This document shows positions 2 through 35,703 of a stretch of 64,000 nt of DNA, in pieces. The stretch is from Monocercomonoides exilis PA203. Lineage: Eukaryota > Protista > Preaxostyla. The notes under the pieces are model-generated. The model was not told the DNA's origin and made no database searches. It worked only from the letters and a program-made list of their open reading frames with translations. Position 1 is the first letter of the stretch, and each line of letters starts with the position of its first letter. Both the position numbers and the translations under genes were made by a program. The stretch is from positions 1,273,569 to 1,337,568 of the forward strand of contig LSRY02000024.1 in NCBI GenBank assembly GCA_001643675.2. The letters run 5' to 3'.

Positions 2-1732
2 AGACATGACACCGCTCTGTGTGATGCTATGGGATGGACGATGGCCATGGTGTGGATTTGCTTTGTGCAAACAGAGCCACCAGAATGGATGAGACATAAA
101 GAAACACTTAAAGATAAAGACAGATGGACGATGGCCATGCACTGGATAAGATATGTTAAATCAGAGCCACCACTGTGGATGAGGCACGATAAAACCGTTT
201 GCGACACAAATGGGTGGACGATGCTCATGCTGTGGAAAATATTTATTGAAGCAGAGCCCCCAAAGTGGATGACTTATGATAATGCACTTGGTGATGAAGA
301 TGGAAGAACAAAGGCGATGAACTGGATCATCGATAAGAAAGCAGAACCACCGCTGTGGATGAGACATGACATCACACTTGGCAATAAAGACGGATGGACG
401 ATGACGATGTATTGGATTGCTGTTGCGAAGACAGAACCACCAGAATGGATGAGACATGACATCACACTTGGCAATAAAGACGGATTCACAATGGCCATGT
501 TGTGGATTATATTTACCCATGCGGAACCGCCAGAGTGGATGAGACATGGCGTTTCACTTGCAAATAATAAAAAAGAAACAATGGCAATGCTGTGGATTCG
601 TGATGTTAAAACGGAACCACCTGCATGGATGAGACACGAAAGCGCATTTGCAGATGATGACGGATATACAATGCCTATGTGGTGGATTCAGTTTGTTCAA
701 ACAGAACCTCCAGAATGGATGAGACATGATATTTCGCAAAAGAATAATTGGGGGAAAACAGTGGCTATGATGTGGATAGAGAATACGAAAACAGATCCAC
801 CAGAATGGATGAGACACGATATTACGCTTCGTAACAATTTCAAATCAACGATGGCTATGTTGTGGATTCAGTTTGTTCAAACAGAACCGCCAGTCTGGAT
901 GAGGCACGAAATTACACTTACCAATAAGAATGGGTGCACAATGGCCATGCACTGGATTCGATATGTCAATTCAGAACCACCAGAGTGGATGAGACATGAG
1001 AAAACACTTGCTGATAGCAAAGGAAGAACAATGGCTATGGTTTGGATTGAATATGTCAAGACAAACCCACCAGAATGGATGAGACACTACAATGAGCTTG
1101 CAGATAAAAACGGAAAACCAATGGCCATGAAATGGATTGCATATGCGAAGACTGAACCACCAGAATGGATGAGGCATGGTTATTCGTTGAAGGATACGAA
1201 TGGGAGGACGATGGCGGATCATTGGAAAAGTAATGTCAAGAGTTCACTACCAGAATGGGTGAGACATGATATAAAACTAAGTCAAAAGGATGGCTGGACA
1301 ATGGTAGATTGTTGGGAAAATAGTGTCAAGAGTGAACCATCAGAATGGATGACACATGACAAAACGCTTGATGATAAAAATGGAAGAACAGAAGCAATGC
1401 GATGGATCGTTGAGAAAAAGGAAGAACCACCTGAAAAAATAAGGCATGACATTAAGCTTTCAGATAATAACGGGCAAACCATGGCCATGCTATGGATTTT
1501 TTGGTTGAAATCAGAACCGCCAGAATGGATGAGACACAGCATCACCCTTTCTGACAAGAATGGAAGAACAATGGCCATGCACTGGATCAAGCAAGTTAAA
1601 ACAGATCCTCCTACATGGATGAGACACGACAAAATGCTTTGCAATAAGAGTGGATGGACAATGGCTAAACTCTGGGAATTCTTTGTTCAGACCGATCTAC
1701 CAAAATGGATGGAGACTGATAAATCCGCATGA
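2..1732 (+). CDS. 30-aa tandem-repeat protein, copy A (ankyrin-like G-x-T-M-A-M-x-W-I...EPPEWMRH units); 5' end probably lies outside the window
   Basis: ORF 29..1732 holds ~19 gap-free 30-aa units, consensus G-x-T-M-A-M-x-W-I-x-x-V-K-T-E-P-P-E-W-M-R-H-D-x-x-L-x-D-x-x. The frame is open back to position 2 (RHDTALCDA-M). Similarity to ankyrin (D..G.TPL) is by eye only. Confidence 0.85.
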   Translation, partial: RHDTALCDAMGWTMAMVWICFVQTEPPEWMRHKETLKDKDRWTMAMHWIRYVKSEPPLWMRHDKTVCDTNGWTMLMLWKIFIEAEPPKWMTYDNALGDEDGRTKAMNWIIDKKAEPPLWMRHDITLGNKDGWTMTMYWIAVAKTEPPEWMRHDITLGNKDGFTMAMLWIIFTHAEPPEWMRHGVSLANNKKETMAMLWIRDVKTEPPAWMRHESAFADDDGYTMPMWWIQFVQTEPPEWMRHDISQKNNWGKTVAMMWIENTKTDPPEWMRHDITLRNNFKSTMAMLWIQFVQTEPPVWMRHEITLTNKNGCTMAMHWIRYVNSEPPEWMRHEKTLADSKGRTMAMVWIEYVKTNPPEWMRHYNELADKNGKPMAMKWIAYAKTEPPEWMRHGYSLKDTNGRTMADHWKSNVKSSLPEWVRHDIKLSQKDGWTMVDCWENSVKSEPSEWMTHDKTLDDKNGRTEAMRWIVEKKEEPPEKIRHDIKLSDNNGQTMAMLWIFWLKSEPPEWMRHSITLSDKNGRTMAMHWIKQVKTDPPTWMRHDKMLCNKSGWTMAKLWEFFVQTDLPKWMETDKSA

Positions 1733-1979
1733 GTGTTTGCTTATTTGTGTTGGATGTGTCGTTTTCGATGCTTTCAATGAATCAGCTGATTAACATGTTT
1801 CTCAATAAAGGCAATTCCACAGCCTATCGAAATGCATGATTATTCTTTCTTTTGAAGTGACTTTCTATCTTTCTGCAAACACTCGGATATTCTTCAAGCA
1901 AATATCAGTTTGATAGCCTATCTATTCTTTATCAATTATTTTTTTTTTCCTCCTCATTTTATCTCAGCAATTTAAGCGT

Positions 1980-2160
1980 TTCATTTCATTTCTTCTTCTT
2001 CTCTTTTTATTTTATGTTATGTTATGTTATGTCATATTATATTATATTATATAATTTTATTTTATTTTATTTTGCTTAGTTTAATTTTGTTTTGTTTTGT
2101 TTTGTTTGGTTTGGTTTGATTTTGTTTGGTTTTGTTTGGTTTTGTTTGGTTTTAATTTTT
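1980..2160. repeat. Degenerate pentamer microsatellite (TTTCA/TTATG/TTTTA/TTTGG/TTTTG)
   Basis: Pentamer tandem units drifting in sequence, directly visible. Confidence 0.8.
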
Positions 2161-2486
2161 TACAAAATAATTTAAATAATTTTTATTTGATTCAGTTTAC
2201 AATCATAGAAAAGCTCAATATGAATCTCTTTCTCTCTTTTTCTTTTCTTATTTTCTTTTTCAATTTGTCAATGTGGCAAATGGATACAATACCGGTACAT
2301 CAGAATTGACTTTATTTTATGATAAAAGTATTTATCATAGTGTAATATCTATTCATACAAAATATCAGAGTGAGGAAATGATTCTATGTTGAAACAAATA
2401 TTTTTCAAAGAAAATAAAAAATTGGATTGGGACATATATTTATTAAAATTTCAAAATAAATAAAACTGTCGATTATATTGGAAAAA

Positions 2487-3545
2487 TTATACTGAAGGGC
2501 TGCATTCAGTCGAACTTTCTTCGTCTCCTGATCCAAGTGGATCAAAATCATCATCATTTTCGATTTCAGGAAGAGTGTCACCTGCATCTGGGATTTCCTC
2601 TTCATCCATTTCTTCTATTATTTCATTTTCATCTTCAATCAATTCATCAAGTTCATAATGAATCAAATCTTTCATCATATCTTTAAACTGAAGCTTCAAT
2701 GAACTTTTAACCAAAAACAATGTAATCTGATCGGCGAGATTTTTAATTCTCATTCCTGACTGAGGAAAGGATGACCATAAATGCTTCCATAACCCTTCAA
2801 TTGTGTTTGTGCAAGCCTTATTCTCTTTATTGAAGAATTTCCGCTTGTGGCAGACTGTTTCATGTAAATAACCAAACGTACTCAAACATTGGAAAGCTTT
2901 CCATTTGTCAGAATATATCTTTGTTCCGAATTTAAGGTGATCCAGAATTATTGGAATCAGTGTTTCTTTGGTTCTGTCAGGAACAATCATCATAAATCTG
3001 TCGCCATCTCCTCCACCTTCCAACCTTACGACTCCTCCAATAATCCAAATCAATTTCTTCTTTTTTCCTTTATGGTATTTCCTTCTTCTCCAGACTGCTT
3101 CGTCTATCTCCACAATCTTCCCCTCTCCTCCGATTTTGGCTGGTTTCTGTTCCAAATCCGCATGCAACAGCACCTCATTACACTAGCCCAATATGATTAA
3201 GTTTTTCTATTCACGGACAATTAAATTGAAACAGTTTTGATTAGGATTTTCAACCATAGATATAGTAAAACAAGAAAAGCAACTCAAAGGGGCTTTTTCA
3301 AATTTTCGAATACTGTTCCTTCATGAATTGAACTCTTGAATTTTCTGTAACTTGTGCAAATACAATATCTGTATCATTCTTCCTTTCTGCACATTTTATT
3401 TTTTTTTTTTGCGAATTTGCCATATTGTTGAAATAACATCTTGTTGAATAGTGAAATTTTAATTCCACGATTTCTTTTCATCATGAAATGTGAGACTCAT
3501 CAATGATATTGTTCTATCTTTAAAGATCAAATTTGGTTCAGCCAT
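2487..3545 (-). mobile_element. Merlin / IS1595 (ISXO2-like) DDE transposase; catalytic half intact, N-terminal half disrupted
   Basis: KIGGEGKIVEIDE, RKYHKG, IWIIGGV, DRTKETLIPII, IYSDKWKAF, HETVCH and TNTIEGLW are characteristic of the ISXO2-like/Merlin DDE domain. Upstream on the minus strand, SSIHEGTVFE and an ATG at ~3545 are separated from it by stops and frameshifts. No convincing TIRs or TSD found. Confidence 0.85.
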
Positions 3546-4664
3546 GAAAAAGGATTAATCATTCGGTTGGAGTGGACTCAACCGACACCCAAAAATTAAC
3601 ACACATTATCATTTTCCCAACATATTAAATGATAAATATTTTATTAATTCTTATTTTATTAAGAAAAATAACTTTATTCAAATATTTAAAATCATCTTCT
3701 ATCTTGTCATTAAAATACAAAAATAATTGGATTTTCCAGGAAAACCCTGACTTTTTGACCTTTTCTTAACCCTAGCAATTAGGAATAGAAAACAAAAAGT
3801 TTTCAACACTCAAAAAAATTTTCAATTTAGAGCTTGTTCATGAAAAGAAATAACATAAACATAAATACAATGGGTGTCATCAAAATCTGTGTTGATTGAT
3901 TCCACTTTTCCCAATCATTCCCTAAAATTGTGAAAAATTCAATGAAGAAGAAATTAAGTATAAATTTTGAACATGTTTCCACATAAAGTTAACAACTGAA
4001 AATATCATAATTATTTATCATTAATAAAGATAAATAGGTTGAAAGTGTTTTAGAATGTTCCGGAATAATACCGTTTTGCCTAGGTGCACCACATAAGCAT
4101 TTTTCTCTTTGAAAAACAGACAAACACATTAAACAAAAAATTTTCGTTGTACCATATTAAAATTCAGATGCAGTATCATGAAAGAAAATCATGAGTTTTT
4201 GCATTTCTCTTCAAATATTTTTATGTCTTGCACAGATGGAATGCATGCAAGTGAAACAAAAAGTCAAATTCACTTCTGCACTTCAACAACTTGCGACATT
4301 TGGATTTGAACAAGGTTTACCTAATAATATTGTGTTTATTCTTCATAGCACATAATGTCCACAATTTTACATTCTTCTTCGTTCAATAAATTACTAAAGG
4401 AGGTTACGCTAAATTTAATATTAAAATGAGGTGAGTTGCTTTTCTTTTTGATTTTTAAAGTCGAATTTATATTTTTATTTAGCGATCCTAATCCGATATA
4501 TATTTTTATGCTTCCAACAAGAGATTTTGAAAAATTGTTTAAATATCTTTTTTCATCATCAGAAACATGTGAAAATTATTTTTCCAACATTATTGTTTGT
4601 TTTTTTTTTCACCATCGATTTTCTTTCTTAAAAAAATGATAATTTTATCAGAATTTTGAAACAG

Positions 4665-8157: not shown

Positions 8158-8368
8158 TTCCTTCATTTTCTGTTTCATAAGATATTGAGTCTTTTTGCGT
8201 ATATTTTTTAAATTTATCCAAATTTTACAATATGTTAATTTGTATTTTTATGATTTTTTGTTGACTTTCATTGAAAATATTATTTGTACATTATGGCATA
8301 CATTTCACAATGTTTTTAAACGTTTTATTTAAACTTTAAATAAAAGATCAAAACCATACTACAACAAT

Positions 8369-19500: not shown

Positions 19501-22500
19501 CATCCAATTAGCCAATTCTGACCCTCTTTCTTTGCTCGGCTGCTCAATGCTGACTGCTTTGTCTGCCTTTGTTGCGAGGCTGAGACAGGCAGCAGCAGAA
19601 TACGAGTGTTTGGTGCAAGGAGAGGCACTGCAGAAGGAGAGGGAGATAATTGCAAGAAAAGAAGGAGAGAAACTAAGGCCAATCATCGGACACGCAGCAT
19701 CTTCACTTGCATTGGGTTCAGTTGCCACAACAACAGCCATGCAGGCAGAGAAGATGAAGAGAGAGTTGGAAGCAGAAAGACTGGCTAAGAAAGAAGGCAC
19801 TGAAGAAAAGGCATCTCAGTTCAAAATGCCACAGTTTGCTTCAAATGATGCTGATAAAAAGGAAACTTCTTCTGTTTCTGTTAGCTCTCCTGCTGCTTCT
19901 CCTTCTGATGCTTCACCTTTTCAGGGCATTCGCATTGCATCTCCTATCACCTCTCCTAATTCCCCTAATTCTCCCAATTCTTCTTCTAATAATAATCCTG
20001 CAGCTTCAAATGCTGCCTCTTCTGCTTCTGCAACAAATGCAACCACAAATGCCACTACCAATCTGAAAACATCTTCAACAGCTTCTGCTCCACCTGATCC
20101 TCCTTCTCTGTCTATCTCTCCTGTCACCTTCCCTTCTCCTCAGAACAGACAGCTCGCACTCAACACAAACAATGCAAATGGCCAGTTTATGTCTCGTTTT
20201 GTCCCTCCGATGCAGATGCCTCTGAATCGCTCTCTGTCCAACACAGACAGCAATGGCATGCCCACAGGCAATCCAGGCATCCTCATGATGAATGGTACTA
20301 ATGGCATCAGCAACATCACTGGAATGCTTGCGAGTCCTCTGAGAGCAATGCCACAATATTCACTCATGGGCAGTTTTGCACCCGGGATGAAGAGCCAAGG
20401 GATGGGGCAGATGCAGCTGCAGCAGCAGATGCTGTTTCAGAGACAGCAGCAGCAGCTCCAACTGCAACTGCACCAACAACAGCAGAGATTGTACCAGCAG
20501 CGTCTGCAGCAGCAACAGAGACAGCTCCAACAACAGCTCTTGCAGAAGCAGAAGAGCCAACAAGACGCAAATCGAACTGGCTCTTCTTCGTACATGTCAT
20601 CATCATCAGCATCTTCCTCTTCTTCCTCTCATTCGTCTCTTCCCATGTCGACTGATGTGATTGGAGAAGCGAGTGAGAAGCGGAGACAAGCATTCTGTGG
20701 TGTGCTTCCATTGCTTGGAGTTGCCAGCCCCACTCCTTTCTCACCCATCCCTTCATCTGCCTTCATCAAAGTGGTCACAGCTGCCATTCCTCTTCCTGCT
20801 GGTGCCAGCACCCCCTCTGCTGCGTCGTCTCCTCTCGATGGCGATGAGAAAGAAAACTTTCTGTCGCCTCCGATGATTTCACTCTCGACAACAGCTGAGC
20901 AGAGGCAGGATGATGTGCCTCCTCTGTTTTTCCCGCCACATGGCTCACTCATTCTGGACACGAGAGAGAAGCACAGATTCGGAGTGGCTGTAAGAGAGAA
21001 GATGGATGCACTCACAGAAAACGAAGGGAAAGACACCGAAACGCGCAAAGCAAGCGAAAAGGTACTTCCGAAGAAGGAGAATGATATGGATTCATCACTT
21101 TTGGTCAAAACATCAGCATTTGCACCTCTCACTACAACAGCAAAGAACAGCGATTCATTCTGGAGACAGGTTAAGTCAAGGTCATCTCTTTCACCGCAGC
21201 CACAGACACAAACACTTCCTGCCCCCTCTTTGACAACTGCACGCACACCATCAGCAGCAGCATCAGCATCATCGTCATCTTTGACTTCTCTTTCATATTC
21301 ACCGAAAAGTACAGAGAAGGGCCAGGATCCATCAGAGCAGTCAAGAGAGGTGCTGGCAGCTGAAGCAGAGAAAGGCGATGTATTGGGGCAAGTGAAGGAG
21401 GATCCAGACATCCCCAGACCTCTCTCTTTGGCTGTCATCGACTCAAAAGATGATTTGTTGGTGCAGACATCTCAGAACAGAGCACGAAGCCGCTCTCCTG
21501 CTGCGTATGATGGACCTTCTGCCATCACATCTCCAGTCCATTTGGCAAACATTGCTCCATCGCCATCTCCTGCTCCACTCCCATCTCCTTCTCCTTCTCT
21601 CACACCTTCCGTTTTCCCTTCATCTACATCTTCTTCATTGGCCAATCGTCCATACACAGCTGCTGTTGCTGTGAGGCGTCTGGTGAATCTGCTTTGGAGG
21701 TTCATTGTGAGCAGCGAGCGTGCTGCATACGATGGTTCCATTCGACAGGCTGGGATTTCTCTCTTCCGTGCGCTGTTTGGAAAGAATGTACCTCCGTGCT
21801 TCAAAGACGATCCATCAATTGTGGCAGCTGTGCTCCCGTCGCTGTATGCTCCTTCGTCATTCCCATCTTCTGCAATGTCTCCGTCGTCTTCATCGTCGCT
21901 TCATTCATTCACCAGTCGAGGTGTATCTGTTGTGTCTCTTTCCCCATCTTCTTCTTCGCTCTCTTCGTTCACTGTGCGAAGAGTGGGTTCTGTTGGAAGG
22001 AGCAGCAGTGTGGCTTCTTTGAAGAGAGAAAGAGAGTTTCTGAGAAGAGGCAGCAGCGTCGGCACTGCAAATGAAGATGCACGAGAAAAGAAGGAGGAGG
22101 CAATCATGAACGAAGAAAGCGAATTCAAGAATATAAATGATGATGTTAGAAAGGGAGCTCAACTAAAGAATGAAGGTCAAGATGATAATTTCTTAAAGTC
22201 CGATGATTCTTTGGTAAAGCAAACAAGCTCAATTGAAAAAGAAGCTGAAAATGGAAGAGAACAAAAAAATGGCAATGCAACAAACAACACTTCTGATGAA
22301 ACTGCTGAAATTAGAACTGCACAATTTGATTGTTCCAGTGATCCTACAAATAAAGATGCAAATGCTCCAGATGCTCTTTTCTCTGGAGTCCAATCGATTC
22401 CAGACGAAACACCAGAGTCATCGGTAAGTCCATCAAAAACAGATTCATCGTTATCGCCCCAAACAGAAACTAAAATTCATTTGCCAAAAATAACTGTAGT

Positions 22501-22603
22501 ATCAAAAGGTACCAAAATTGTATTCAAGAAATGCATTTCACAACGGCCCAATCCATCTGAAGGGGTTAACACTGCTGGCAGTCCACTTCGATTATCTCAA
22601 TAG
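13595..22603 (+). CDS. TAF2: Transcription initiation factor TFIID subunit 2 (M1 aminopeptidase-like fold), greatly expanded by low-complexity inserts
   Basis: Exons 13595-13663, 13794-13866 and 13938-22603 give HETLQLLIDL...LNARQIKITGITVDG. Further TAF2 motifs: ARLWMPCLD...CTWRIE, VCCSGE, IAMAIGPFE, PNSWDDMWIAKGIVGYL, KATVVIGMLARRIG, FRIDP, DPVGRVIAIRGL, PNNFSNSDDYYVQKSV, NDNQQNPFTDTFYL. Confidence 0.92.
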
Positions 22604-23508: not shown

Positions 23509-26500
23509 TTACTCAATCGAATAACTGTCTGAATGCACTCCCATTGCAATTGACTGAAGTTGACGAAGATGCGCCTCTCCGGCTGAAAGAGCCATCGCTT
23601 GCAGTCGAGTGCCTTCGTTGAACAACAATTCCTGTTTGTTTGCATTTCATTCATTTACATCAAATTTTGAAAAAGAAAAGATAAGAAAAAATATATAAAA
23701 AAAAAACAATTCACATTTTCATTCTAAATTAGCAAACCTTTGGACTTCCAACTTCGGCCAAATTGCCATCCTCCATAACAAAAACAAGATCTGCATCAGC
23801 AACTGTGGACAGTCTGTGAGCAATCGTTATTACGGTGCAGTTCTTAAAGCATCTTCTTGTCACTTCTTGTATCTTTGCATCTGTTTCAAAATCAACACTT
23901 GCTGTTGCTTCATCCATCAAAATGATTTTGGAGCCATGAAGCAGCCCTCTCGCCAGGCACAACAATTGGCGCTGCCCAACAGACAAGTTGCCTCCATCTT
24001 CCACGACATTCGAATCTAACCCTTTTCCCATCTCTTGTACTGTTTCTTTCAGGCCAACTTCTTTCAGTGCATTCCACATCTCTTCTTCGTTATGTTCGCC
24101 CAGAAGATCGAGATTGTACTTCACTGTCCCTTCAAACAGAGTGGCCTCCTGTGGAACAGTGGAGATCATTGACCTCACATCGTGTATTCCCACCTTCTCT
24201 TTGATATCCAGCCCATCAATCAATATTCTCCCAGCTTCTGCTTCCACCAATCGAAGGAGCGCAAGAATGACAGTGGATTTACCAGAACCTGTCCGCCCAA
24301 CAATACCAACTTTGGAGCCACCCGGAATTGTGAACGACACATCCTTCAAAACAAGTGGCAGATGAGGACGATATCTGAGTGATACACGATCAAACACAAT
24401 TTCTCCTGAAGAAGGCCATTCTGTTGGGTGTGCAATGGAAGCGACAGAAGAGTCAACTTTCGATGGATGCTGCAAAGTTGGACAAGGAAGTGGCTTTGGC
24501 AGTTCCTTGTGCCACTCTGGTTCCTGGTCAATGTCCATCATCTCCTTCAGCTTCTCCACAGATCCCATTTCAGTTTCCAATTGAGAGATTTGTCTCGCCA
24601 GCCCCGTAGCAGTTGAGACTGTTTTCTGCGAGAATGAAATTGTCAGCGCAAAGAGTGCCAGGCTCCTTCCTAAGCCTCTCATGGCACAGCCGATCAGACC
24701 GATCAGCAGCATGAGGAGCGAATTGATGGTGCCAAGTTGGACCATCACATACCGAGAGACACTTGTTGTGTAGAAAGACGCATCCAATGACTCTTGAATG
24801 ATTTCATCGTAAGTGTCGATAAAATAACTCTGTTTGTCAAATGCACGGATCGTTTGAGATCCATTCATGCACTGCTGCAGATAATGCATCATTCTTGAGC
24901 GCGATGTGGAAGAAAACCGCCTCAGGCGGAGGTTGGCCAATGTGACTCGGATCTGAGCCATCACTCCCAATATCATCATCGGAATGAGGCACAAGACAAG
25001 CCATGGCATCGAAAAGCAGGCGCTGATGAAGGAGACGCCAACGGTGAACACAGAAACAAACAGGTTTGTGAACATCTGAGGAACGCTGATGTCGAGCGAG
25101 GTGATGTCTTTTGATGCTCTGTTGACGAGCCTTCCAGTTGGAGTGACGTCAAAATAGCTCATCGGAGCATGGAAGAGGCGGGTGTTAATTGCATTGTTGA
25201 TCTTTTTTGAGGCGCGTAGCCCAACAGCCAGCATAGAAAGCATACGAGGAATCACAAACAAAACAGTAGCTGCGCCAATGGCAACATAAAGAACGAAATA
25301 CAAAACAGGACCAGCGGAAAGTGTTGTTGTTGAAGATAGAAACTTATCGTTAAAAGACGAAAATGAAGAAGTTGTTTGCGTTTTATTGGCAGACAAATAC
25401 GAAAGCAAATAGGAACCAACTTTCTTTATGTTTCCTCCATCAGCTTTATCATCACTTGATGGCTCTTCAGTCTTTGTCCAGAATCCAAGCACGTATTGCT
25501 GTGCAGAGCGGAGAAGATTGTCGATCAAATATGTTGCAGCAACAAGGATAAGAAGAATAAGTGAAGCCTGTTTGAAATACCACATATAAACAGAAAAGGC
25601 AACTTTTCCTTCGACTGTGTCTTCAGCCGAAGTTAGCTTTGCAATTGAAGGTATTGCATCCGATGAAGAAGTTGAAGAAGAAGAAGAAGAAGATGTTGTT
25701 GTTGTTGATGACGATGACGATGACGATGATGAGGAGGAGGAAGAAGAGGAAGAGGAAGAGGAAGAGGAGGAAGAAGAAGAGTCTAAAGAACTCTGCAATC
25801 TTTGTGACTGTGATGCAGATGAAGGAGAAAAGACTGGTGAAGGTGAGAGTGGAGAGGACATAACAGAAGAGGAAGGAGAAGGGGTTTCTGGTGGATACAA
25901 GACAAGTGGCGGAGTGGTGATGTTGCTGTGCTGCTGTTGGTATTCGTGTAGAAGCTGCTGTTCAATGCGAAGACGCTGGCTGCCAAGCATGTCTTGGTCA
26001 GATGGCGAAGAATGGACGATTGGGGGAGGAGTGGAGCCAAGAGACACATTCAGAGCAGAAGAAGACGGAACCGACGAGAGAGAAGGAGGAATCTTTGGGC
26101 GTTTTGGAGTGACAGTAGACATATTTGTCGGAGAGGGTGAAGATAGAGATGAAAAAGAGAAGACATTTTGTGCATTCATTTGGTCGGAGCCATTTCGAAT
26201 AGGAGGAGATAGAGAATTATCCAATTCAGTTGAAGAAGCAGAAGAAGAGGTTGAGGCAGATTGCATGCCATCCTGATTTTGCATAACATCTGCATTTGAA
26301 TGCTGAGTGGATGGTTTGAAAAGAGAGAAAGCAGAAGAAGGAGAATTTGATCCAATGCGAAGCTCTTCAATACTTGCTGATGAATCTGTGTTCTTTTTGC
26401 CATCAAAGTCGCTTCCAGTTAAACTTGCACTTTCGACAGCTGTTGTTATTTTTTCTCCTGCCATCGCTTTCTTATCACTGCTGACATGTAAATTTGATGC

Positions 26501-29500
26501 ATCGCCCACTTCGCTCAGAATACCCACAAACTCTGCAGCACTCCCCACCTTTTCTATCACCCCGTTTTTGCTCATTGAAATGACACAGTCAAACTTCGGC
26601 AGGAACTTCGTGTGGTGTGTTGCCATCAGCACAGTCTTTCCCTTCAGATAGTCTGCAATGCACTCATCCACAATGTGCTGTCCAACATGTGCATCGACAC
26701 TCGCCAGCACATCGTCAAACAGAAATACCTCAGACGACGAGTATATCGCCCGTGCCAGCGCCACCCGCATCTTCTGCCCGCCAGACAGATTTATCCCTCT
26801 CTCTCCTATTTCTGTCTCATCGCCGCCAGGAAGAATAGCCAAGTCTGGTTCCAAACAGCTCACAGACACAACACGACGGTAGCGCTGGGCATCAAATGGC
26901 TCTCCAAAGAGAATGTTGTCTTTGACTGTTGTATTCAAAATCCATGGGATCTGAACAGAAAAACAGAATAAAAAAAGAAAACAAAAAAATAATTATTTTG
27001 TTTAAAAACGAATTTATTCCTTGCTTAATAAAGGGGAAAAAAAATATATCGAAAGAAACAAACCTGAGGAATGTAAGCGACTTTTCCTTTGACGAATCCT
27101 CTTCCCTTGACACATACCATCTCTCCCAGCAGCGCCTGCAGCACAGCTGACTTCCCACAGCCAACAGGGCCGACGAGGAGTGTGTGTGTCTGTCTTTTGA
27201 GTGAGAAAGTGAGCGAGTGAATGGAAGGCACAGGATTTTCCAATGGAACAAGCATTGTCGTGCTGTTCTGGACAAATTCCTTCGCAAGCAGCACATTCAA
27301 AAAGCGACGAAACAGCGACGTACATTTGGATGATGAGGATGAAGTAGAATTTGGAGAGGAAGAAGAAGAGGAAGAAGACGAGATCGAATGCTGTTTCTCT
27401 TCTCTTCTTCTTTCTTTTTCATTTGACTTTTCTTCATTCTCTTTATCCTCAGGTGTTTTCATTTCATTTCCTTCTTTTTCATTCTTTTTCCCTCTTCCTT
27501 TTCCGCCCCCGCTTCCTCTTTTCTTTTGCTGTTCGTATCTCGACCAGGCAAATGAGGCATTCTTCAGGCAAATCACAACATTGCTATCTTCATTCGGCAA
27601 TTCTTCGTCTTCTGCCTCTTTTTCATCTGAATTGCCCAATCCTGATAGATTGTCCATCTCAATCATTATTTTCTCCTCGCTCGCAACAATTGCTCCAACC
27701 TTCGTCAGATCTGCTTTATTAACATTGTTTTTATTCTTGCTCTCTTCTTCCACAAATTTCATTTTATCTCCTGCTATCGTATCATCATCATCATCATCAA
27801 CATCAACATCAATTTCTTCTTCTTTTTCTCTCTGTTCTTCGAATCTTCCTCTTCCCTCTCTTTTGGTTCTCCCAATTTTCTTTCTTCTTTTCTCTTCTTG
27901 TTCGTACAAAGGAGGTTCCGTCACACCTTCCTCAATATCATTTTTCAAAGGCTTCAAATCCTCTTCATCTCCTTCGTCATCTCCTCCCTTAAGCGCCTTC
28001 GATGTTCCATGTCTCGAATTCTGTTTATATTCTTTCCTTTTCTTTTTCATCATCTTTGCTTTGCTCTTTCTCTCTCTCTCTTTCTGAAGCTCTGCCCTTT
28101 TCTGTTGCATCCTTTTCTTCCTGGCCCACTCTTCGTCACTTCTCTTGCTCTCTTCCACAATCTGCTCTCTCGCCGCTTTTCCTCCGCCTCCAACCAAAGT
28201 ATCTGTGCACAAAAATGAACCGATCCGCTCCAGCACGATTTTTGTATCGAGGAACGAAGAGATAAAGCTGGGGATGCGGGAGATCAGCGGGCGGAGGCCG
28301 TCCACAAGTGTGATGGTTGGGAAGATGTCAGACGCCACCAGCGGAAGATGCCTTGCAAAACGGATGCTGACAATGACCACAATCGCAATGACACTCGCCG
28401 AGTTTCCGATGACAGATGCAACTGTCTGGCGCATTTGCTGTGAAGCAGGAGATGTTCAACAATCATTCAAGCGCATTCATATTTTGTCACAGATTGAAAG
28501 GGAGGGTTTAAAAAGTTTTACGAAAAGTTTTGCAATTTTTCCAAAAATGAAACATTCAGAAAAATTCGAGTAAGTTGAGAAAAAGAAACTAAAAACAGAG
28601 AATCATCAAACAATTTTCTTCAACAATTTTTGCTCATTGTTTCTGTGATGATTAATGCGTTCTTTCATTGGCTCTTCCCATGCATTCATCTTTATAATCT
28701 GCACAAAAAATAGTTACATTTGAGTGTTAAAAAAATGAAATGAAAAAAAAGAAAAAAGATGAATTTTTTCAAACTTTCATTCCATGAATCGCTTCTGTAA
28801 TCTTCTTTACTTTTGCATCGCCTTCTCTCATCAAAGCGCGTCTGACATTTCGTGTTCCTCGTGCAATTAGAGATGAAAGAGGCGTCAAGATTGATAGAAT
28901 GACAACACCCCACAAGGAGCTCCAATCCAAAAAATTCACGAGGAAAATGCATGAAAGCATGAATCTCAACGGAATATCAGCAAGCATTGTCACAAAATCT
29001 ATCAACATCATAATCCTATGGATATCGCTTGTTGAAATGTTTAATAACTGGCCAGTTCCAATTTGCATCTTCGCATCTTCGCTAAGTGTAATTGTGCGCT
29101 TAAAAATAAGTCCAGAAAGTCCAATTTTAAGTTTATTTTGCATCAAAGAAGTAAGTTGATAGGACCAAGTGTCAACGATATTGCATATTAATCTACTTCC
29201 AAAAATCAGAACAGAAACAACAATTCCATGAAGTATTGTTCCATGAGGATCAGATGCCCACTGAAGCAAATGTCTAAGTATGTACGTTTCAGTATAATTG
29301 AATGCTTATGAAAATATTTAGTTAAATAAATGTTCTTCAGTAAGAATGGATATAAAGAATAAACCTGTAGAAATTAATTGAAGAATCAAAGCCAAAATAA
29401 ACATTGCCCTAACATATTTAAGAGAAACTAGAAACAAAGATGGCCTAAAAATACACAGATAGTTAAGTTTTCAAAAGATTTTTCAACACTGAATATCGCA

Positions 29501-29799
29501 AACTTTTCTTTTTCTGTTTCTTTTTCCCAGATTAATTCAAGTTCGCGCACATTTGGACGACATTCATTTGCAAAGTATGTAAAGGGGAAAAAATTTTCAT
29601 CGAATGGCTTTTCGGAACAACAATTAACGAAGAAATACATTAAACAAATTAACCTTTTCATTTGCACGAGCAATTGCAGGCTTTGTAAAATAAAATGTTA
29701 ATTTTGATAAAAAGCCTGCATTCTTATATCTATTTAAACATATGAATAAATGCGATAACAATAAACACTTACAAACAAATCTGTTTTTAATTTTACCAT
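23509..29799 (-). CDS. ABCC / MRP-type full ABC transporter (short type, no TMD0), multi-exon
   Basis: Lasso motif AGFLSKLTF near the 5' end; TMD1 with GQLLNISTSD and IHGMK|IIKMNAWE; NBD1 with GPVGCGKS, EIGERGINLSGGQKMR and FLFDD; TMD2 with APMSYFDVTPTGRLVNR; NBD2 with GRTGSGKS, NLSVGQRQLLCLAR and ILMDEATASVD. The last exon ends ...YSIE* at 23509. Confidence 0.93.
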
Positions 29800-30279
29800 T
29801 TCGAAAAAATTATTTAATGGTTAACAAAAAGAACAAAATTTGTTCTTTTTGTTTTTGAGAAAAAACTGAGATTTGTATCAAACTTTTTCAGCAAACATAT
29901 CATTATAAATCAATTGAAACAATGCAAAAAATTACAGGAAAACTTTTTTAAATTGAGAAAATGTTTAAAAAATCTCGAATGGAACAAAATTCATAAGGGA
30001 AAATATTTTGTCCCAAATATTTTCCCATTTCAAATAATATTTATTTCATCAGACAGTTTGAAAATAACATGCTCAATGAATATTTGAAAAGAATTGGAAT
30101 GTTTCAAACATTTATGAATCTTTTTCTTTCACACTTTGATGCAAAAAATAATTATTTGTGAAAAAAAATTCAACGAAATTGTTGAATAATTTCCGTCCAA
30201 GAATAATGCTTATGAAATAAATAGAAAAAAATAAAAAGAAATTTTTGAGTTATAAAACTCGAAATAATACCTCAAACGA

Positions 30280-31730
30280 TTACAAAATAATCCGAAATGA
30301 GCCACGATAAACGATCAAGATGTTTTTTATCGAAAAATTCATATCATTCATTAAAGCTGATGTGATATCTTCGCATCCTTCTTCTTCCATCTTTTCAAGC
30401 ATTTTCCTTTTGGTTGCCTTTCTTTTCTCTTCCTTCATTTTGTTTTTCTCCTTTACTTTTAATCGACTTAAAATATTCAAAGAGAAAAGAAAATAATATT
30501 TCATCAAATTGTCATTTAATGTTGGTTGCTGAACCTCATCCAAAACAGCATCAATTGCCTCGCCTTTCAATAAGTCTTCAACATGTGCAACTCTTTTTAC
30601 TGCATCCTTTAGTTGATATGTGCATTTCCTGCTTATTTCTTCGTAATTGTCCCTTGCTGCTCGATGCACCTGAACAAAGCTGCTCAAAAGCTCAAGAAAT
30701 TCTTCATTCCCCAATCGGAAACTGCGAAAATAAAACACCAACATTTGGAGCCATCTCATCAAAGCAAGCTCTTCTTTAGTCTCTTTTCTCACTTTCTCCG
30801 CTTTTTTCTCTCTCTTCCAATCAACACCATTTGCCAGCTCTTCTAGTTCTCTTGCTGCTTCTCTTTCAAAATGCCGTTCATTCGCAATCGCTTCTTCCAA
30901 GCATTTGTCGTTGAAATATCTATTAATCAAAAACTTCCAAGCAGACTATTAGGCGAGTCGTGTCAGATTCCGATGTTCCTGATGATGTTGAATAATTTCT
31001 TTGATTTCATTGTCGTAAAGTTCTTTTTCTATTTCCTTTTAAAAAATGTGAAAAAATATCAATAAAGTCAAAAAGGAAAAAGAAGTGCTCACACATAAAA
31101 TTCATCATGACAACTCAATGCCAAAAATGCCATTTCCTTCTCTTTTTGAGCTTCCTCGTTTTCCTCTTTCTTCAACGCAGCTTTCAGCAGACATGGCACG
31201 CAAACAGATATCAATTGTGATGAAGCCCCAACGTTTAACAAAACATTGCTTTCGCAAAGTTCAGTAAGAAGATTTTCGTTTCTTTTCTCTTTTTTCTTCT
31301 CTTCATCGTCAATCATCTTCAAAAATCTTCTCTTCAACGAAGAAAATAAAAAACCGAAGTTTATTATGTTAAATAACATGCTGCGATATCCCATGTGCTT
31401 CAAAAGCAAGATTGCATTTCCCATCGTCAGTTTTTCTTCCTTAATCATTTGATCGATTTTCTCGAACAGTTCTTTTGTGAATGTTGAATAAAGTTCCTCT
31501 TTATTCATTTCATCAATCAATCTGTTCATTTCTTTAATTTTCTCTTTTTGTTCTGAAACGCTGCAGCTTTTCAATTCCTCAAGTAATTCTAAAGAAAAAA
31601 ATTTTATTCCAATGATAAAAGCCATTGAGCCTTCGAAAAAACGGTGAAAAATGAACAAATTTGAAAACTTTTCCTTTGGGGCCATCTCTCGATTTCTGTC
31701 TTCGGTTCTACAATCAATGAATTCTTCCAT
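30280..31730 (-). pseudogene. Lineage-expanded helical hypothetical protein family, copy 1 (inactivated)
   Basis: Paralog of 39748-41062 and 43612-45074 (MIxEEKL..xNAILLLK, LTxLCE, CVPCLLKAA.KKEENEE.QKE, EDLLKGxAIDAVL). Two adjacent stops, TAA-TAG at 30946-30951, replace Y-Q in LAYQSAW. Confidence 0.8.
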
Positions 31731-33004
31731 TCTGTTTATTTAGAGTGCATTCCATTCGCAATGAATATACCCAACAATTAAGCAAAATCAAATAAATATC
31801 AAACATCGTTCACGATCCAACAAATTGAGAAGGTTACAGTCGCTATCCCAATTGTTTTGCTTTATTAATAAAGATTTGGAAACGAGTTCTATGAAAGCAG
31901 CCTGATATGGCTGAACAAGGCAAGAAATGTTAGTTTTTTGTTTCTTGTTGATCAAACCAACAAATATTCATTAAAAACAAATGGAGAATTGTTATTCGAT
32001 TCATGATGCTCCATGAAATTGATTTCTTCCCCTTTTGGAACAGAATTAATTAAAGATATAGAAATGGAACTTGATGGGAGAAGACAACTGCAATCAAGCA
32101 AAAGGATTGAGAAGAAGATTTTCATGACTTTTTTTGAGTTATTGATTGTCTTGTCGAAAGCCAAAGAACAGCTAATGCTTGCATTCTTGAAGGTCCTCAT
32201 TGGTTATTTTATTTAACAGATTCTGATTTCATTGAAAAGGATTGAAGTGATTGCTGAAGACAAAAGAAGTGAAAAGTTCCAAAATCGAAATGGATAAAAC
32301 AAGCAAAACGTCAATTGCAATTCTTCACAAAAAAAATCAAACGAATGGCAGAAGAACAAGGTTGGATGGTTCAATTGCAACAGCATCATGGGCTATCAAA
32401 AAATGGTTTATAAAAGGCAAATCTATCAAAATTGGCTTCACTGTCCAAGCTGACTGGCTTTGTGATTGATAAGAGTTCGGTGATGCGTTTTGTTCATCCT
32501 TTTCAATTTGAATGATTGAGCATTACTGGCAGCAAAATACATTTGCTTTCTGGTGAAAAGAGATTGATAAAGGAATTTTTTGGAGGCAATTCTGTTGCCA
32601 AGGAGCAATGAAAAAAATGCATAAATTATTATTCTTTTTCTTCAGAGACCAAAAGCATTGGAGTTATGGATATGGAAGGAATTGGCCGACATTTCAGTTT
32701 CTGCTCCATTAGAATGAAGATGAATGGCAAAAACATTTGTTTTCAAAATGAAGATGCTCTTGTGGAAATGAGGCGTTCATCAGACAATTCAAAAACTCTT
32801 CCTTTTTGCTTCAGCAATATAAGTGTGATGAAAATGTGTTAAAGAATGAAAGGACCTCTTTTCGAATGTCTCAACAATCCATCGTTTTTGAATCAACATC
32901 ATTTTCAGATGAAAAGTTCACTTTATTTCTGCATTTGAGCTGCTTCGTGACGAACACCTTGCAGGCATCGAAAACAACAACATTCAAAAATTTTTCATCG
33001 CCTT

Positions 33005-33166
33005 CTCCTTTTCCTTCTTCCTCTTATTCCTCTTCTTCCTCTTCTTCTTCTTCTTCCTCTTCCTCTTCTTCTTCTTCTTCTTCTTCTTCTTCTTCTTCTT
33101 CTTCTTCTTCATCATCATCATCATCTTCTCCGTCTTCTTCATCTTCTTCCTCTTCTTCCTCTTCTT

Positions 33167-33197
<31 letters not shown>

Positions 33198-33250
33198 CTC
33201 TTCTTCTTCTTCTTCCTCTTATTCCTCTTCTTCCTCCTTATTCTTCTTCC
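33005..33250. repeat. (TCT/TCC/TCA)n trinucleotide microsatellite
   Basis: Directly visible; produces spurious poly-Ser and poly-Lys ORFs. Confidence 0.9.
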
Positions 33251-34056
33251 TCTCCCCTTCTCCAACACCAAAAACTTCATCAATACAACCTGACATACAT
33301 TCTACACTGCCTCTTTTAGCATCGGAGAAAATAGCTGTGCTTCGTACTCCTTATATAGTATCTTCTTCTTCTTCTACTTCTTCTTTATTGTTTTTTCTTC
33401 TTTTCAGTTGTCCAAAAGAAAGAAAGAATGAATTTTTGCCCTTTCGATGTCTTCTGCCACACCCTCAGACACTCCACAAATACGTTCACTCACTCACTCG
33501 CTCGCTCGCTCATTCATTCAATGATTCATTTATTCAACTCTTGCTGTGGCTGATGCAAATGAATGCATCCCTGAAGAGATTAGAAATTCAAATAAAAAAA
33601 AATTAAAAAATTTAAAAAAAAATGAATTTGTTAAAGAAATGTCTGATTTCAATTTTTCGAATGTTTCTGAGGATTTTTGTTCAAAATCAAAAGAACAGAA
33701 AATAATAGGCACAGAATAATTCATAATTTTGGTATTTTTCAAAATTGCGGTTTTCATTTTGATTCATGAATTATTTTTGGAATGAATAACAAATGATTTT
33801 ATTAAAAAAATATTTTTTTAAATAAATTTCTGTTTTAAAAAAAAAAATATCAGAAAAATAAAATGTAATACTGATAAAAAATAACACTGTAACTAAAATA
33901 CACATCAATTTTCAAAATAATAAGTTGAAAAAAAAAAGTTATCTCCAAGAAATTAATTATTTTATGATCAAATATATAATTATTATTGAAAAAGCATTTT
34001 TTAACAATTGATATTTTCACAGTTTAAATTGCAGGAAGAGCTGTAAAACTGAAGCA

Positions 34057-35703
34057 ATGAGCGATAATATGGAAAGCAAAATTGATGCACAAAAAGAGAA
34101 TAGTGATCTCTCTTTAAAGGACGAGAAAGGAAGAACAAAAGCAATGCAATGGATTATTGAGAAAAGAACAGAACCACCAAAAGAAATAAGACACGATGTT
34201 ACAATTTCGGATAATGAAGGAAATACAATGGCCATGATATGGATTCAGTTTGTTCACACAGATCCACCAGAATGGATGAGACACGATATTACGCTTCGTA
34301 ACAATTTCAAATCAACGATGGCTATGTTGTGGATTCAGTTTGTTCAAACAGAACCGCCAGTCTGGATGAGGCACGAAATTACACTTACCAATAAGAATGG
34401 GTGCACAATGGCCATGCACTGGATTCGATATGTCAATTCAGAACCACCAGAGTGGATGAGACATGAGAAAACACTTGCTGATAGCAAAGGAAGAACAATG
34501 GCTATGATATGGATCTATAATGTTAAAACAGAACCACCGGAATGGATGAGACACTACAATGAGCTTGCAGATAAAAACGGAAAACCAATGGCCATGAAAT
34601 GGATTGAGGATGTTAAAACAAAACCACCACTATGGATGATAATGGATAGCACACAAGGCACCAAGGAAGGGAGGACATTGTCGATGAAGTGGATTGAAGA
34701 GAAAAAAACGGAACCGCCAGACTGGATGAGACACAACATTGCAATTGGAGATAATGGAGGAAAAACAATGGCCATGTATTGGATAAAGGAAGTCAAAACA
34801 GAACCACCTTTGTCAATAAGGCATGAAGTAGCAAAAAAAGATAACAATGGTGAAACGATGGCGATGAAGTGGATTCAGTTTGTTAAAACAGACCCACTGG
34901 GGTGGATGAGGCACGGGATTACGCTTGGAAATAAGAAAGGAGAAACAATGTCCATGCTGTGGATTTCAAATGTGAAGACAAACCCACCAACTTGGATGAG
35001 ACATGGCAATACTCTTTGCAACAAATATGGGAAAACAATGGCCATGCTTTGGATTGAACATATTCAGACAGAGCCTCCAGAATGGATGAGACACGATATC
35101 ACGCTTGGTGACAAGGATGGAAAAACAATGGCCATATATTGGATTGAAAATGTTAAGACAGAACCTCCAGAATGGATGAGGCATGATCCTGCTCTTATTG
35201 ATAAGGAAGGACGAACAATGGCTATGCTGTGGATTTCAAGTGTGAAGACAAACCCACCAGAATGGATGAGACACGATGCTACACTTGCAAACTGTTTTGG
35301 CTTGACGATGGCGATGAAGTGGATTCAAGAAGTCAAGACAGAGCCACCTGAGTGGATGAGACATGACAACAAACTTACCGATATGCCTGGGCGAACAATG
35401 GCGATGCAATGGATTCAGTTTACTGAAACTGGACCGCCAAAATGGATGAGACATGACAATCGGGTTGCGGACAGGGATGGAAAAAGGATGGCAGATTATT
35501 GGGAAAGATATGTTGGGAATGAGATTCCAGAATGGATGAAGAACGATGAATCAATTTCCGCTAATGACATAGATAATGAATTTGATGATACAGTAGATGA
35601 TGATGAAGAAATGATAAAGGCAATAAATTTGATCAAAGAAAGTTTAAAGAAGCATCGGGGCAAAAGTGGAAAGAAAATGCACTTGTCGATTAGGATTGAA
35701 TAG
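34057..35703 (+). CDS. 30-aa tandem-repeat protein, copy B (16 units, short N-leader, acidic then basic C-tail)
   Basis: Intact intronless 548-aa ORF with the same consensus as copy A; shares identical DNA blocks with it. Confidence 0.88.
   Translation: MSDNMESKIDAQKENSDLSLKDEKGRTKAMQWIIEKRTEPPKEIRHDVTISDNEGNTMAMIWIQFVHTDPPEWMRHDITLRNNFKSTMAMLWIQFVQTEPPVWMRHEITLTNKNGCTMAMHWIRYVNSEPPEWMRHEKTLADSKGRTMAMIWIYNVKTEPPEWMRHYNELADKNGKPMAMKWIEDVKTKPPLWMIMDSTQGTKEGRTLSMKWIEEKKTEPPDWMRHNIAIGDNGGKTMAMYWIKEVKTEPPLSIRHEVAKKDNNGETMAMKWIQFVKTDPLGWMRHGITLGNKKGETMSMLWISNVKTNPPTWMRHGNTLCNKYGKTMAMLWIEHIQTEPPEWMRHDITLGDKDGKTMAIYWIENVKTEPPEWMRHDPALIDKEGRTMAMLWISSVKTNPPEWMRHDATLANCFGLTMAMKWIQEVKTEPPEWMRHDNKLTDMPGRTMAMQWIQFTETGPPKWMRHDNRVADRDGKRMADYWERYVGNEIPEWMKNDESISANDIDNEFDDTVDDDEEMIKAINLIKESLKKHRGKSGKKMHLSIRIE

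What the first reader, a model, noticed from the sequence alone, without database searches (positions are those of the whole stretch)
791..34606. Two 30-aa repeat genes 33 kb apart are mosaics: identical DNA blocks with one swapped variable half-module (candidate cassette-shuffling diversification system)
Seen: 791-1039 is base-for-base identical to 34258-34506 (~250 bp, nearly three repeat units). About 35 bp then differ heavily (VWIEYVKTN versus IWIYNVKTE), identity resumes at ~1074-1139 = ~34541-34606, and the rest of the two genes is only repeat-level similar. The switch points fall in or next to the two conserved DNA islands of each 90-bp unit (ACAATGGC[CT]ATG = TMAM; CCACC.GAATGGATGAGACA = PPEWMRH). 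Inference: segmental gene conversion or template switching at these islands assembles new arrays from half-repeat cassettes, analogous to lamprey VLR assembly or fungal NLR repeat shuffling, producing a variable binder repertoire in a protist.
Basis: partly seen in the sequence, partly recalled or inferred. Interest (0 to 1): 0.8.

Follow-up and report, generated by a model that had tools for sequence, protein, structure and literature searches.

The report
Gene conversion between two ankyrin-like repeat genes
Two repeat-protein genes 33 kb apart near a chromosome end of the gut protist Monocercomonoides exilis really do share stretches of identical DNA, but this looks like ordinary copying between related genes (gene conversion) in a very large gene family, not a dedicated cassette-shuffling machine.

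Summary
Window 791-1039 is identical to 34258-34506 (249 bp). Eleven mismatches follow in 1040-1072, and identity resumes over 1073-1139. The flanks are only 38-63% identical, and no third copy above 78% exists in the 82-Mb genome.

Both genes are intact members of a large family of 30-residue repeats: about 1,600 units genome-wide, no Pfam hit, and a predicted fold that matches ankyrin solenoids. The two genes belong to different subfamilies.

I read the pattern as recent ectopic gene conversion, probably one discontinuous tract from gene B into gene A.
- B's version of the "swapped" half-module is native to B's subfamily; A's version is unique to A.
- Among 29 sampled genes there are 129 exact tracts of 60 bp or more, with continuous lengths and edges at all repeat phases.
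- Edges are at most 1.5-1.7x enriched at the conserved islands.
- Gene pairs that share tracts are mostly on the same contig.
- Synonymous sites inside the islands vary freely, so there is no DNA-level signal.
- No donor-cassette library, signal peptide or membrane segment was found.

The VLR-like programmed reading is unsupported. The comparison with fungal NLR repeat shuffling holds only as ordinary recombination.

An earlier report of this scan (s1-471266) had already called another member of this family a shortened ankyrin repeat.

The parts
1..1732 (+). Gene A. It runs off the left edge of the window; the full CDS is G000:C19:1273255-1275297 plus stop, 681 aa from the first Met, with 22 units of the 30-aa repeat. 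It ends straight after the repeats and lacks the acidic/basic C-terminal tail of gene B.
   Evidence: ORF and translation. Units parsed with an HMM. No upstream similarity to other members and only weak, shifted downstream similarity.
34057..35703 (+). Gene B, 548 aa, with 16 units of the 30-aa repeat and a C-terminal tail (…MIKAINLIKESLKKHRGKSGKKMHLSIRIE). It belongs to a subfamily with copies, mostly near contig ends, on C1, C7, C11 and C16.
   Evidence: AlphaFold2 model with pLDDT 84.8. All top Foldseek hits are ankyrin solenoids, best E=3.5e-11.
791..1039 (+). Shared block 1 in gene A (end of unit 11, units 12-13, and unit 14 as far as TMAM). It is identical to 34258-34506.
   Evidence: The block is private to A and B genome-wide.
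34258..34506 (+). Shared block 1 in gene B (end of unit 1, units 2-3, first half of unit 4).
1040..1072 (+). Unconverted patch in gene A (VWIEYVKTN), with 11 differences from B. This sequence is unique in the genome.
   Evidence: A pattern search with up to 3 mismatches finds only A.
34507..34539 (+). Unconverted patch in gene B (IWIYNVKTE), native to B's subfamily.
   Evidence: An exact copy lies at C1:2642118, and a 3-mismatch copy lies at the same CDS offset (447) in the C11 paralog. There are 12 places genome-wide at 3 mismatches or fewer.
1073..1139 (+). Shared block 2 in gene A (start of unit 15, RHYNELADKNGKPMAMKWI). This is B-subfamily-type sequence, so it was probably copied from B into A.
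   Evidence: the unit is present in conserved context in five other B-subfamily genes (83-97% identity to B's unit). A matches B exactly, including three substitutions specific to B.
34540..34606 (+). Shared block 2 in gene B (start of unit 5).
33700..39500 (.). Duplicated block of at least 5.8 kb around gene B, shared at 73-89% with loci near contig ends on C1 and C11 and partly with C16 and C7. Gene A lies outside it.
   Evidence: blastn of window 29000-41000 against L031-L035; conserved 5' and 3' flanks.
60438..63999 (+). Telomere repeat (GGGTTA)n, about 600 copies. The window ends at a chromosome end, so A and B lie about 59 kb and 25 kb from the telomere repeats.
   Evidence: Tandem Repeats Finder. 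Window = C19:1273569-1337568 and the contig length is 1337568.

Best explanation
Genes A and B are two intact members of a very large, so far unannotated family of intracellular proteins in Monocercomonoides exilis. The proteins are built from a 30-residue, ankyrin-like repeat. The identical 249-bp and 67-bp stretches are the product of recent non-allelic (ectopic) gene conversion between the two genes. The genes lie in the same orientation, 33 kb apart, in the same subtelomere, and belong to different subfamilies. The simplest history is one discontinuous conversion tract of about 350 bp copied from B into A, with a 33-bp patch left unconverted (patchy mismatch repair). Two separate events are also possible. 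The same homology-driven process (gene conversion and unequal exchange between and within arrays) acts across the whole family. It yields sub-repeat mosaics, with junctions somewhat favoured where the coding sequence is most conserved. Shown here: the tracts, their privacy to A and B, the native status of B's patch and of block 2, the family-wide tracts and the distribution of their edges, the lack of DNA-level constraint in the islands, and the ankyrin-like predicted fold. Inferred: the direction for block 1, a single event versus two, patchy repair, and any role in diversifying binding surfaces.
For: - Exact tracts with background flanks.
- Private to A and B in 82 Mb.
- A and B differ in N-terminus, C-terminus and flanks.
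- Unit 5 of B is subfamily-native, and A carries B's three private substitutions.
- B's patch is native and A's patch is unique.
- Among 29 genes there are 129 exact tracts of 60 bp or more. Lengths are continuous up to 346 bp, apart from one 1,913-bp run between a near-identical inverted duplicate pair. 39 tracts with a sharp edge are intragenic, and 18 of 23 tract-sharing gene pairs are on the same contig against 23% expected (Fisher p=9e-9).
- Edge phases of the long tracts are indistinguishable from uniformly placed breakpoints. Shorter tracts show only a 1.5-1.7x excess at the islands.
- Synonymous heterozygosity of island codons is 0.34-0.71, against 0.30-0.69 for other well-conserved codons.
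- No other repeat units or cassettes occur in the window, and the genes between A and B are ordinary (TAF2-like, ABC transporter).
Against: - No reads were available, so the reality of both loci rests on the published ONT/Canu assembly, which was polished with ten rounds of Pilon (PMC8767320). Polishing could have sharpened an already similar tract to 100%.
- The direction of block 1 is unresolved, because that part of the array is at background similarity among all B-subfamily members.
- 17-19% of identical half-module pairs have background-level flanks on both sides. Edge phases of short tracts deviate from the simple null (p about 1e-3 to 1e-6). So some preference for half-module-sized exchange exists, which plain recombination explains only qualitatively.
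- Only 29 of probably more than 100 genes were sampled. The same-contig excess is confounded by local duplication on C80.
Confidence: 0.82

Rival explanations
1. A programmed diversification system: half-repeat cassettes are joined at the TMAM and PPEWMRH islands by templated copying or template switching, as in lamprey VLR assembly, to build a variable binder repertoire.
For: - Sub-repeat mosaicism is real: 25 of 153 and 26 of 135 identical half-module pairs have background flanks on both sides.
- Left edges of tracts are about 1.7x enriched at PPEWM and right edges about 1.6x at TMAM.
- The hypervariable residues (positions 7, 10, 12, 17, 20, 21) line up with the randomised positions of designed ankyrin binders when aligned on the G-x-T motif. 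That alignment is my inference from memory.
Against: - Both genes are complete ORFs.
- There are no cassette arrays in the window, and no other genomic copies of the block's half-modules beyond one 2-mismatch relative.
- Most half-modules are unique in the sample.
- Tract lengths are continuous and edges occur at all phases.
- Synonymous sites in the islands vary freely.
- Exchange is biased towards the same gene or contig.
- The proteins have no signal peptide or membrane segment.
Confidence: 0.06
2. An assembly or polishing artefact: the identical block was written into one of the genes by consensus or by Pilon polishing with mis-mapped short reads.
For: The assembly was polished with Nanopolish and ten rounds of Pilon (PMC8767320). 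Perfect identity over 249 bp with zero differences is what homogenising polishing would give.
Against: - The surrounding sequence is 37-62% divergent at the same offset, so short reads from one gene should not map to the other.
- An internal 249-bp patch cannot arise from a contig mis-join, and the loci are separated by 33 kb of unique genes.
- Similar tracts occur in many other gene pairs and within genes.
- The patch and block-2 pattern makes biological sense against the paralogs on C1 and C11.
Confidence: 0.05
3. Shared ancestry only: A and B descend from one duplicated gene, and the block is a remnant kept identical by strong purifying selection while the rest diverged.
For: Both genes belong to one family and the repeats are in register.
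Against: - All synonymous sites in the block are identical, while family synonymous heterozygosity is about 0.3-0.7 per codon.
- The block covers the most variable residues.
- A and B differ in termini and flanks, and B's true paralogs lack the block.
Confidence: 0.02

Closest known systems
Ectopic (interlocus) gene conversion and unequal exchange in tandem-repeat multigene families, for example the highly internally conserved WD40/ANK/TPR repeats of fungal NLR genes (Podospora HNWD/het genes) and Wolbachia ankyrin-repeat genes. These examples come from my own knowledge and were not checked in papers here.
   Same: Repeat units are exchanged within and between paralogs. The genes are mosaics with sharp identity tracts. 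Hypervariable positions sit on a fixed scaffold. No dedicated machinery is needed.
   Different: - No NACHT/NB-ARC or other effector domain is present (no Pfam hit).
- Repeats are much less alike (mean 63% nucleotide identity between units) than in the fungal arrays.
- The repeat is a 30-residue ankyrin-like variant.
- Exchange is often at sub-repeat scale.
Ankyrin repeat proteins (Pfam Ank clan; AnkR/AnkB, DARPins)
   Same: The predicted solenoid of helix-turn-short helix-hairpin units matches ankyrin solenoids (Foldseek E down to 3.5e-11; all top hits are ANK). It has a G-x-T motif before helix 1, and the variable positions fall where ANK proteins bind targets (inference).
   Different: The period is 30 residues, not 33. 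The second helix is reduced to about 3 residues. The motif is TMAM/WI…EPPEWMRH instead of TPLH…. No Pfam ANK hit was found and no sequence-level hit to any solved ANK protein.
Lamprey VLR assembly and segmental gene-conversion antigenic variation (trypanosome VSG mosaics, Borrelia vlsE, Neisseria pilE/pilS)
   Same: New repeat or variable-region combinations arise by short-tract templated copying between related sequences.
   Different: Those systems have one expression site plus silent, incomplete donor cassettes, encode surface or secreted proteins, and vary somatically or clonally. Here all copies seen are complete genes. There are no donor arrays and no signal peptide or TM segment. There are no data on clonal variation.
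Subtelomeric paralog families that exchange sequence between chromosome ends (for example Plasmodium var, yeast subtelomeric genes). From my own knowledge.
   Same: Gene B lies in a block of at least 5.8 kb duplicated near several contig ends. Its paralogs are mosaics of each other.
   Different: Many family members lie in internal clusters, at least 16 of the 29 sampled genes on contig C80. The A-B exchange is intrachromosomal.

Membership tests
Ankyrin repeat (Pfam Ank/Ank_2 etc.) | Significant match to the Pfam ANK profile HMMs | tested here: not met
   Pfam scan of A and B at E<=0.1 gave no ANK family. A profile of 14 members against PDB sequences gave no ANK hit.
Ankyrin repeat (Pfam Ank/Ank_2 etc.) | Repeat of about 33 residues with two antiparallel helices and a beta-hairpin or loop, stacked into a curved solenoid | tested here: inconclusive
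   The period is strictly 30 residues. The model has one helix of 8-9 residues plus a 3-residue helix per unit. The overall solenoid matches ANK solenoids, with Foldseek prob 1.00 and TM 0.31-0.55.
Ectopic gene conversion between paralogs | An identity tract far above background, with sharp edges, between otherwise diverged paralogs | tested here: met
   249 bp and 67 bp at 100% against flanks of 38-63%. Next best genomic match is 78%.
Ectopic gene conversion between paralogs | Donor and recipient can be told apart with outgroup paralogs | tested here: inconclusive
   Block 2 and B's patch are native to B's subfamily, so B to A holds for block 2. Block 1 cannot be polarised.
Ectopic gene conversion between paralogs | A general family-wide process with continuous tract lengths and a bias towards nearby copies | tested here: met
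   129 tracts of 60 bp or more, continuous up to 346 bp plus one 1,913-bp run between a near-identical duplicate pair. 18 of 23 tract-sharing pairs are on the same contig against 23% expected (confounded by local duplication).
VLR-like programmed cassette assembly | An incomplete germline gene flanked by arrays of partial donor cassettes | tested here: not met
   A and B are complete ORFs. No repeat units lie outside the two genes in 64 kb. The block's half-modules have no other genomic copies at 3 mismatches or fewer, apart from one 2-mismatch relative.
VLR-like programmed cassette assembly | Junctions confined to short conserved sequences that serve as DNA-level switch signals | tested here: not met
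   Edges occur at all phases. Long tracts fit the uniform null and short tracts show only 1.5-1.7x enrichment. Synonymous sites in the islands are unconstrained.
VLR-like programmed cassette assembly | Somatic or clonal variation of the assembled gene; a dedicated deaminase or recombinase | not testable with these tools
   No read-level data were available, and linked enzymes were not searched for.
Surface antigenic-variation families (VSG, var, vlsE) | A secreted or membrane-anchored product | tested here: not met
   No 19-residue window has a Kyte-Doolittle mean above 1.5, and the N-termini are hydrophilic in all 29 (30 ORFs) sampled proteins. This is a heuristic, not a dedicated predictor.
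Fungal NLR-type highly internally conserved repeats | NLR architecture (NACHT/NB-ARC plus a repeat array) and unit-to-unit identity above 85% | tested here: not met
   No Pfam domain. Mean unit-to-unit nucleotide identity is 63%.

The most novel reading that the evidence does not exclude
The roughly 1,600-unit family may be a rapidly recombining intracellular repertoire of ankyrin-like binders. Short-tract, sub-repeat gene conversion, favoured at the PPEWMRH and TMAM coding islands, would continually make new combinations of the hypervariable loop and helix residues. It might do so at rates high enough to give clone-to-clone variation. That would be a protist counterpart of fungal NLR repeat shuffling, on a new 30-residue scaffold.
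Probability: 0.12. Interest if true: 0.65.

Novelty: new member of a known kind. Interest (0 to 1): 0.35.

Why it matters
The case shows that a striking "mosaic" between distant repeat genes needs no special machinery. Ordinary ectopic gene conversion explains it, and the apparent placement of switch points at conserved islands is largely what random breakpoints would look like.

The by-product is more useful. M. exilis carries a very large family (about 1,600 units, probably more than 100 genes) of a 30-residue ankyrin-like repeat with no Pfam match. Neither of the two M. exilis genome papers I searched contains the word "ankyrin". The family shows hypervariable positions on a fixed scaffold and pervasive sub-repeat mosaicism.

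It could serve as a natural test bed for how recombination and selection shape repeat-protein binding surfaces. It may also account for part of the 35% "unclassified repeats" reported for this genome; that last point is a suggestion, not something I tested.

Tried and rejected
I did not try to obtain them another way, so the family analysis rests on 29 genes (693-720 units).
2. The look-up of encoding contigs for gene B found no record. Records of this genome are probably withheld, so the block could not be confirmed from an independent assembly.
3. Polarity of block 1: I compared B with its paralogs on C11 and C1 over CDS positions 181-450. All pairs are at background similarity there, so B is not a lone outlier and the test is uninformative. 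A's closest paralog (C10:41006-42221, 79%) could not be fetched.
5. Sequence-level ANK membership (Pfam, PDB profile search) came back blank.
6. The weak Pfam hits Gam and YycE-like_C are below their cut-offs and I dismissed them.
7. The word-index protein search found only two metagenomic relatives. I did not run the large representative search because no claim here rests on the absence of relatives.


Full report
**Source and setting**

The window is G000:C19:1273569-1337568 of an 82.3-Mb, 101-contig assembly. Earlier notes of this scan name the organism as the oxymonad Monocercomonoides exilis. The size and contig number match the published ONT assembly (PMC8767320). The window ends in about 3.5 kb of (GGGTTA)n, so it is a chromosome end.

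Gene A runs off the left edge. Its full CDS is 681 aa with 22 repeat units. Gene B (34057-35703) is 548 aa with 16 units. Both are on the + strand, 33.5 kb apart. Between them lie ordinary genes: an IS1595-type transposase fragment, a TAF2-like giant ORF and an ABC transporter. No further repeat units occur anywhere else in the 64 kb.

**Observation**

It is confirmed exactly.
- Window 791-1039 equals 34258-34506 (249 bp, no differences).
- Positions 1040-1072 carry 11 mismatches.
- Positions 1073-1139 are identical again.
- At the same offset the neighbouring 90-bp blocks are 38-63% identical.
- With position-specific mismatch rates from 693 units, such runs have chance probabilities near 10^-56 and 10^-15.
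- A genome-wide search with 760-1180 finds only A and B; the next hit is 78%.
- Pattern searches for the block's variable segments find only A and B, plus one 2-mismatch relative in a C80 gene and its inverted duplicate.

**What the genes are**

Neither protein hits Pfam, and a family profile does not hit any solved ankyrin protein by sequence. An AlphaFold2 model of B, built on an alignment of 14 paralogs, is confident (pLDDT 84.8). Each 30-residue unit is an 8-9-residue helix, a turn, a 3-residue helix and a hairpin-like loop. Every leading Foldseek match in the PDB is an ankyrin solenoid: ankyrin-1, AnkB, DARPins, NOMPC (E down to 3.5e-11).

So this is an ankyrin-like solenoid with a shortened repeat. 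That agrees with an earlier report of this scan on another member (s1-471266). It fails the sequence-level membership tests.

The core DNA motif occurs 1,596 times in the genome against 0 for the control, so the family has on the order of 1,600 units. A protein search lists 264 matches on many contigs, with a heavy cluster on C80. None of the 29 sampled proteins has a hydrophobic N-terminus or a membrane-like segment, so they are probably soluble intracellular proteins.

Amino-acid entropy is above 3.2 bits at positions 7, 10, 12, 17, 20 and 21 and low at the scaffold positions. Aligned on the G-x-T motif, these positions correspond to the target-binding positions of ankyrin repeats. That correspondence is my inference.

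Only two relatives turned up in the word-index search of 5.8 billion proteins. Both come from metagenomes, and one has a weak, sub-threshold C-terminal RING-finger match.

**A and B are not simple duplicates**

B shares its N-terminus, C-terminal tail, at least 500 bp of 5' flank and at least 700 bp of 3' flank with many members. A shares none of these. B sits in a block of at least 5.8 kb (window about 33.7-39.5 kb) that recurs near contig ends on C1 and C11 and partly on C16 and C7. B's C-terminal units are 92-100% identical to those paralogs, while its units 2-4a match only A.

**History of the exchange**

- Unit 5 of B (RHYNELADKNGKPMAMKWIEDVKTKPPLWM) is present, followed by the same odd unit (IMDSTQGT…), in five other B-subfamily genes. 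A carries its first 58 bp, including three substitutions private to B. So this stretch went from B to A.
- B's version of the 33-bp patch (IWIYNVKTE) is exact in the C1 paralog. It lies, with 3 mismatches, at the same CDS offset (447) in the collinear C11 paralog. It is therefore native to B.
- A's version of the patch occurs nowhere else in the genome.
- Block 1 cannot be polarised. That part of the array is at background similarity among all B-type genes, and A's nearest paralog (C10:41006-42221, 79%) could not be fetched.

A single discontinuous B-to-A conversion tract of about 350 bp, with the patch left unrepaired, explains everything with one event. Two events, or a bidirectional exchange in one intermediate, remain possible. 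This step is inference.

**Family-wide test of the cassette idea**

I parsed 29 genes into 720 units (693 when one of a near-identical inverted duplicate pair is dropped); spacing is almost always exactly 30 aa. Mean unit-to-unit nucleotide identity is 63%.

- **Tracts.** There are 129 exact in-register tracts of 60 bp or more. Lengths are continuous up to 346 bp, plus one 1,913-bp run between the near-identical inverted duplicate pair. Thirty-nine tracts with a sharp edge are intragenic. Of 23 gene pairs that share such tracts, 18 are on one contig against 23% expected (p=9e-9). That excess is confounded by local duplication.
- **Edges of long tracts.** I compared the repeat phase of the first mismatch outside each tract with a simulation in which breakpoints are uniform and one walks to the first mismatch. 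Tracts of 60 bp or more fit the null (35 right edges, p=0.51; 45 left edges, p=0.19). The null itself peaks just after the islands. This means that "switch points next to islands" is what random breakpoints look like.
- **Edges of shorter tracts.** With shorter tracts selected by information content (101-405 edges), the fit is rejected (p about 1e-2 to 1e-6). The effect is modest. Left edges are about 1.7x enriched at PPEWM, right edges about 1.6x at TMAM and 1.5x in the following variable segment, and there is a deficit inside the RHDxxLxDxxG half. Every phase is used.
- **Half-module sharing.** Of 693 half-modules of each type, 582 and 567 are distinct. Among pairs identical in one half-module, most have a flank above 90% identical on at least one side. 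However, 25 of 153 and 26 of 135 have background flanks on both sides. Exchange of less than one unit therefore does occur.
- **Synonymous sites.** Synonymous heterozygosity of island codons (T13 0.34, A15 0.71, P26 0.55, P27 0.46, R1 0.47, H2 0.48) equals that of other conserved codons. The islands are DNA-conserved only because they encode Trp, Met and fixed residues.

**Verdict**

The preference for junctions in conserved stretches is weak, and it is what homology-dependent recombination predicts.

Nothing supports a programmed, VLR-like system. There are no incomplete expression-site genes, no donor-cassette library, no DNA-level signal, no quantised tract sizes and no secreted product. 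The fungal-NLR comparison holds only in the sense of ordinary recombination acting on repeats, and the defining NLR features are absent.

An assembly artefact is unlikely. Sequence this diverged would not cross-map, and the pattern agrees with the paralogs. It could not be excluded without reads, because the assembly had ten rounds of Pilon polishing.

I rate the finding as a new member of a known kind. The undescribed 30-residue ankyrin-like family and its pervasive mosaicism are the part worth following up.

Noticed in passing
window 60438-63999: About 600 copies of GGGTTA (TTAGGG-type telomere). The window ends at the end of contig C19, so the whole region is subtelomeric.
   Followed up: partly
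window 33700-39500; L032, L034, L035, L033: A block of at least 5.8 kb around and downstream of gene B recurs at 73-89% identity near contig ends on C1 and C11, and partly on C16 and C7. Gene B's 5' flank (500 bp) and 3' flank (700 bp) are also conserved with many C80 members, so the family spreads as whole gene-plus-flank units.
   Followed up: partly
window 2487-3173 (-): A 228-aa ORF with an ISXO2/IS1595-like DDE transposase domain (E=1.4e-13) lies just downstream of gene A. It is probably a transposon fragment.
   Followed up: no
window 13787-22603 (+); 23729-26938 (-) and 27025-28434 (-): A 2,938-aa ORF has TAF2-like Ig and TPR domains. An ABC transporter appears split into two adjacent ORFs on the minus strand, by an intron or a frameshift.
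   Followed up: no
G000:C80:91412-93990 (+) and C80:100350-102931 (-); L011, L012: Two 859-aa family genes form a near-identical inverted pair about 8 kb apart, with a 1,913-bp exact run. This is a recent inverted duplication.
   Followed up: no
G000:C80:446418-450789 (-): Hits to the query block recur every 989-990 bp (11 units) at least four times. This suggests a higher-order tandem amplification of an 11-unit segment inside one gene or gene cluster. The sequence could not be fetched.
   Followed up: no
G000:C53:8583-10324 and C94:8733-10448: Two short-coordinate contig ends carry the same family gene with a 30-bp offset, and the C94 copy has in-frame stops. They may be alternative assemblies or haplotypes of one locus, which makes them a possible place to look for array variants.
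   Followed up: no
P0001 (JGI metagenome), P0002 (L046/L047, ENA ERZ27247346 and JGI 3300028603): These are the only relatives found outside this genome. P0001 joins about 10 units of the same repeat to a Cys-rich C-terminus with weak RING-finger matches (E=2e-4, below the Pfam cut-off). That hints that the repeats can act as substrate-binding arms of E3 ligases. P0002 sits among densely packed, same-strand ORFs without Pfam hits.
   Followed up: partly
C1 paralogs versus A/B (translations): Similar half-modules occur in a different order in different genes. WIRYVK…EPPEWM precedes HEITLANKNGWTMAM in the C1 genes, whereas HEITLTNKNGCTMAM precedes HWIRYVNSEPPEWM in A and B. This is another sign of sub-repeat rearrangement.
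   Followed up: no
window 33002-33253, 38164-38235, 45679-46156: Long CTT/GAA and TTC trinucleotide runs lie in the intergenic DNA around gene B.
   Followed up: no
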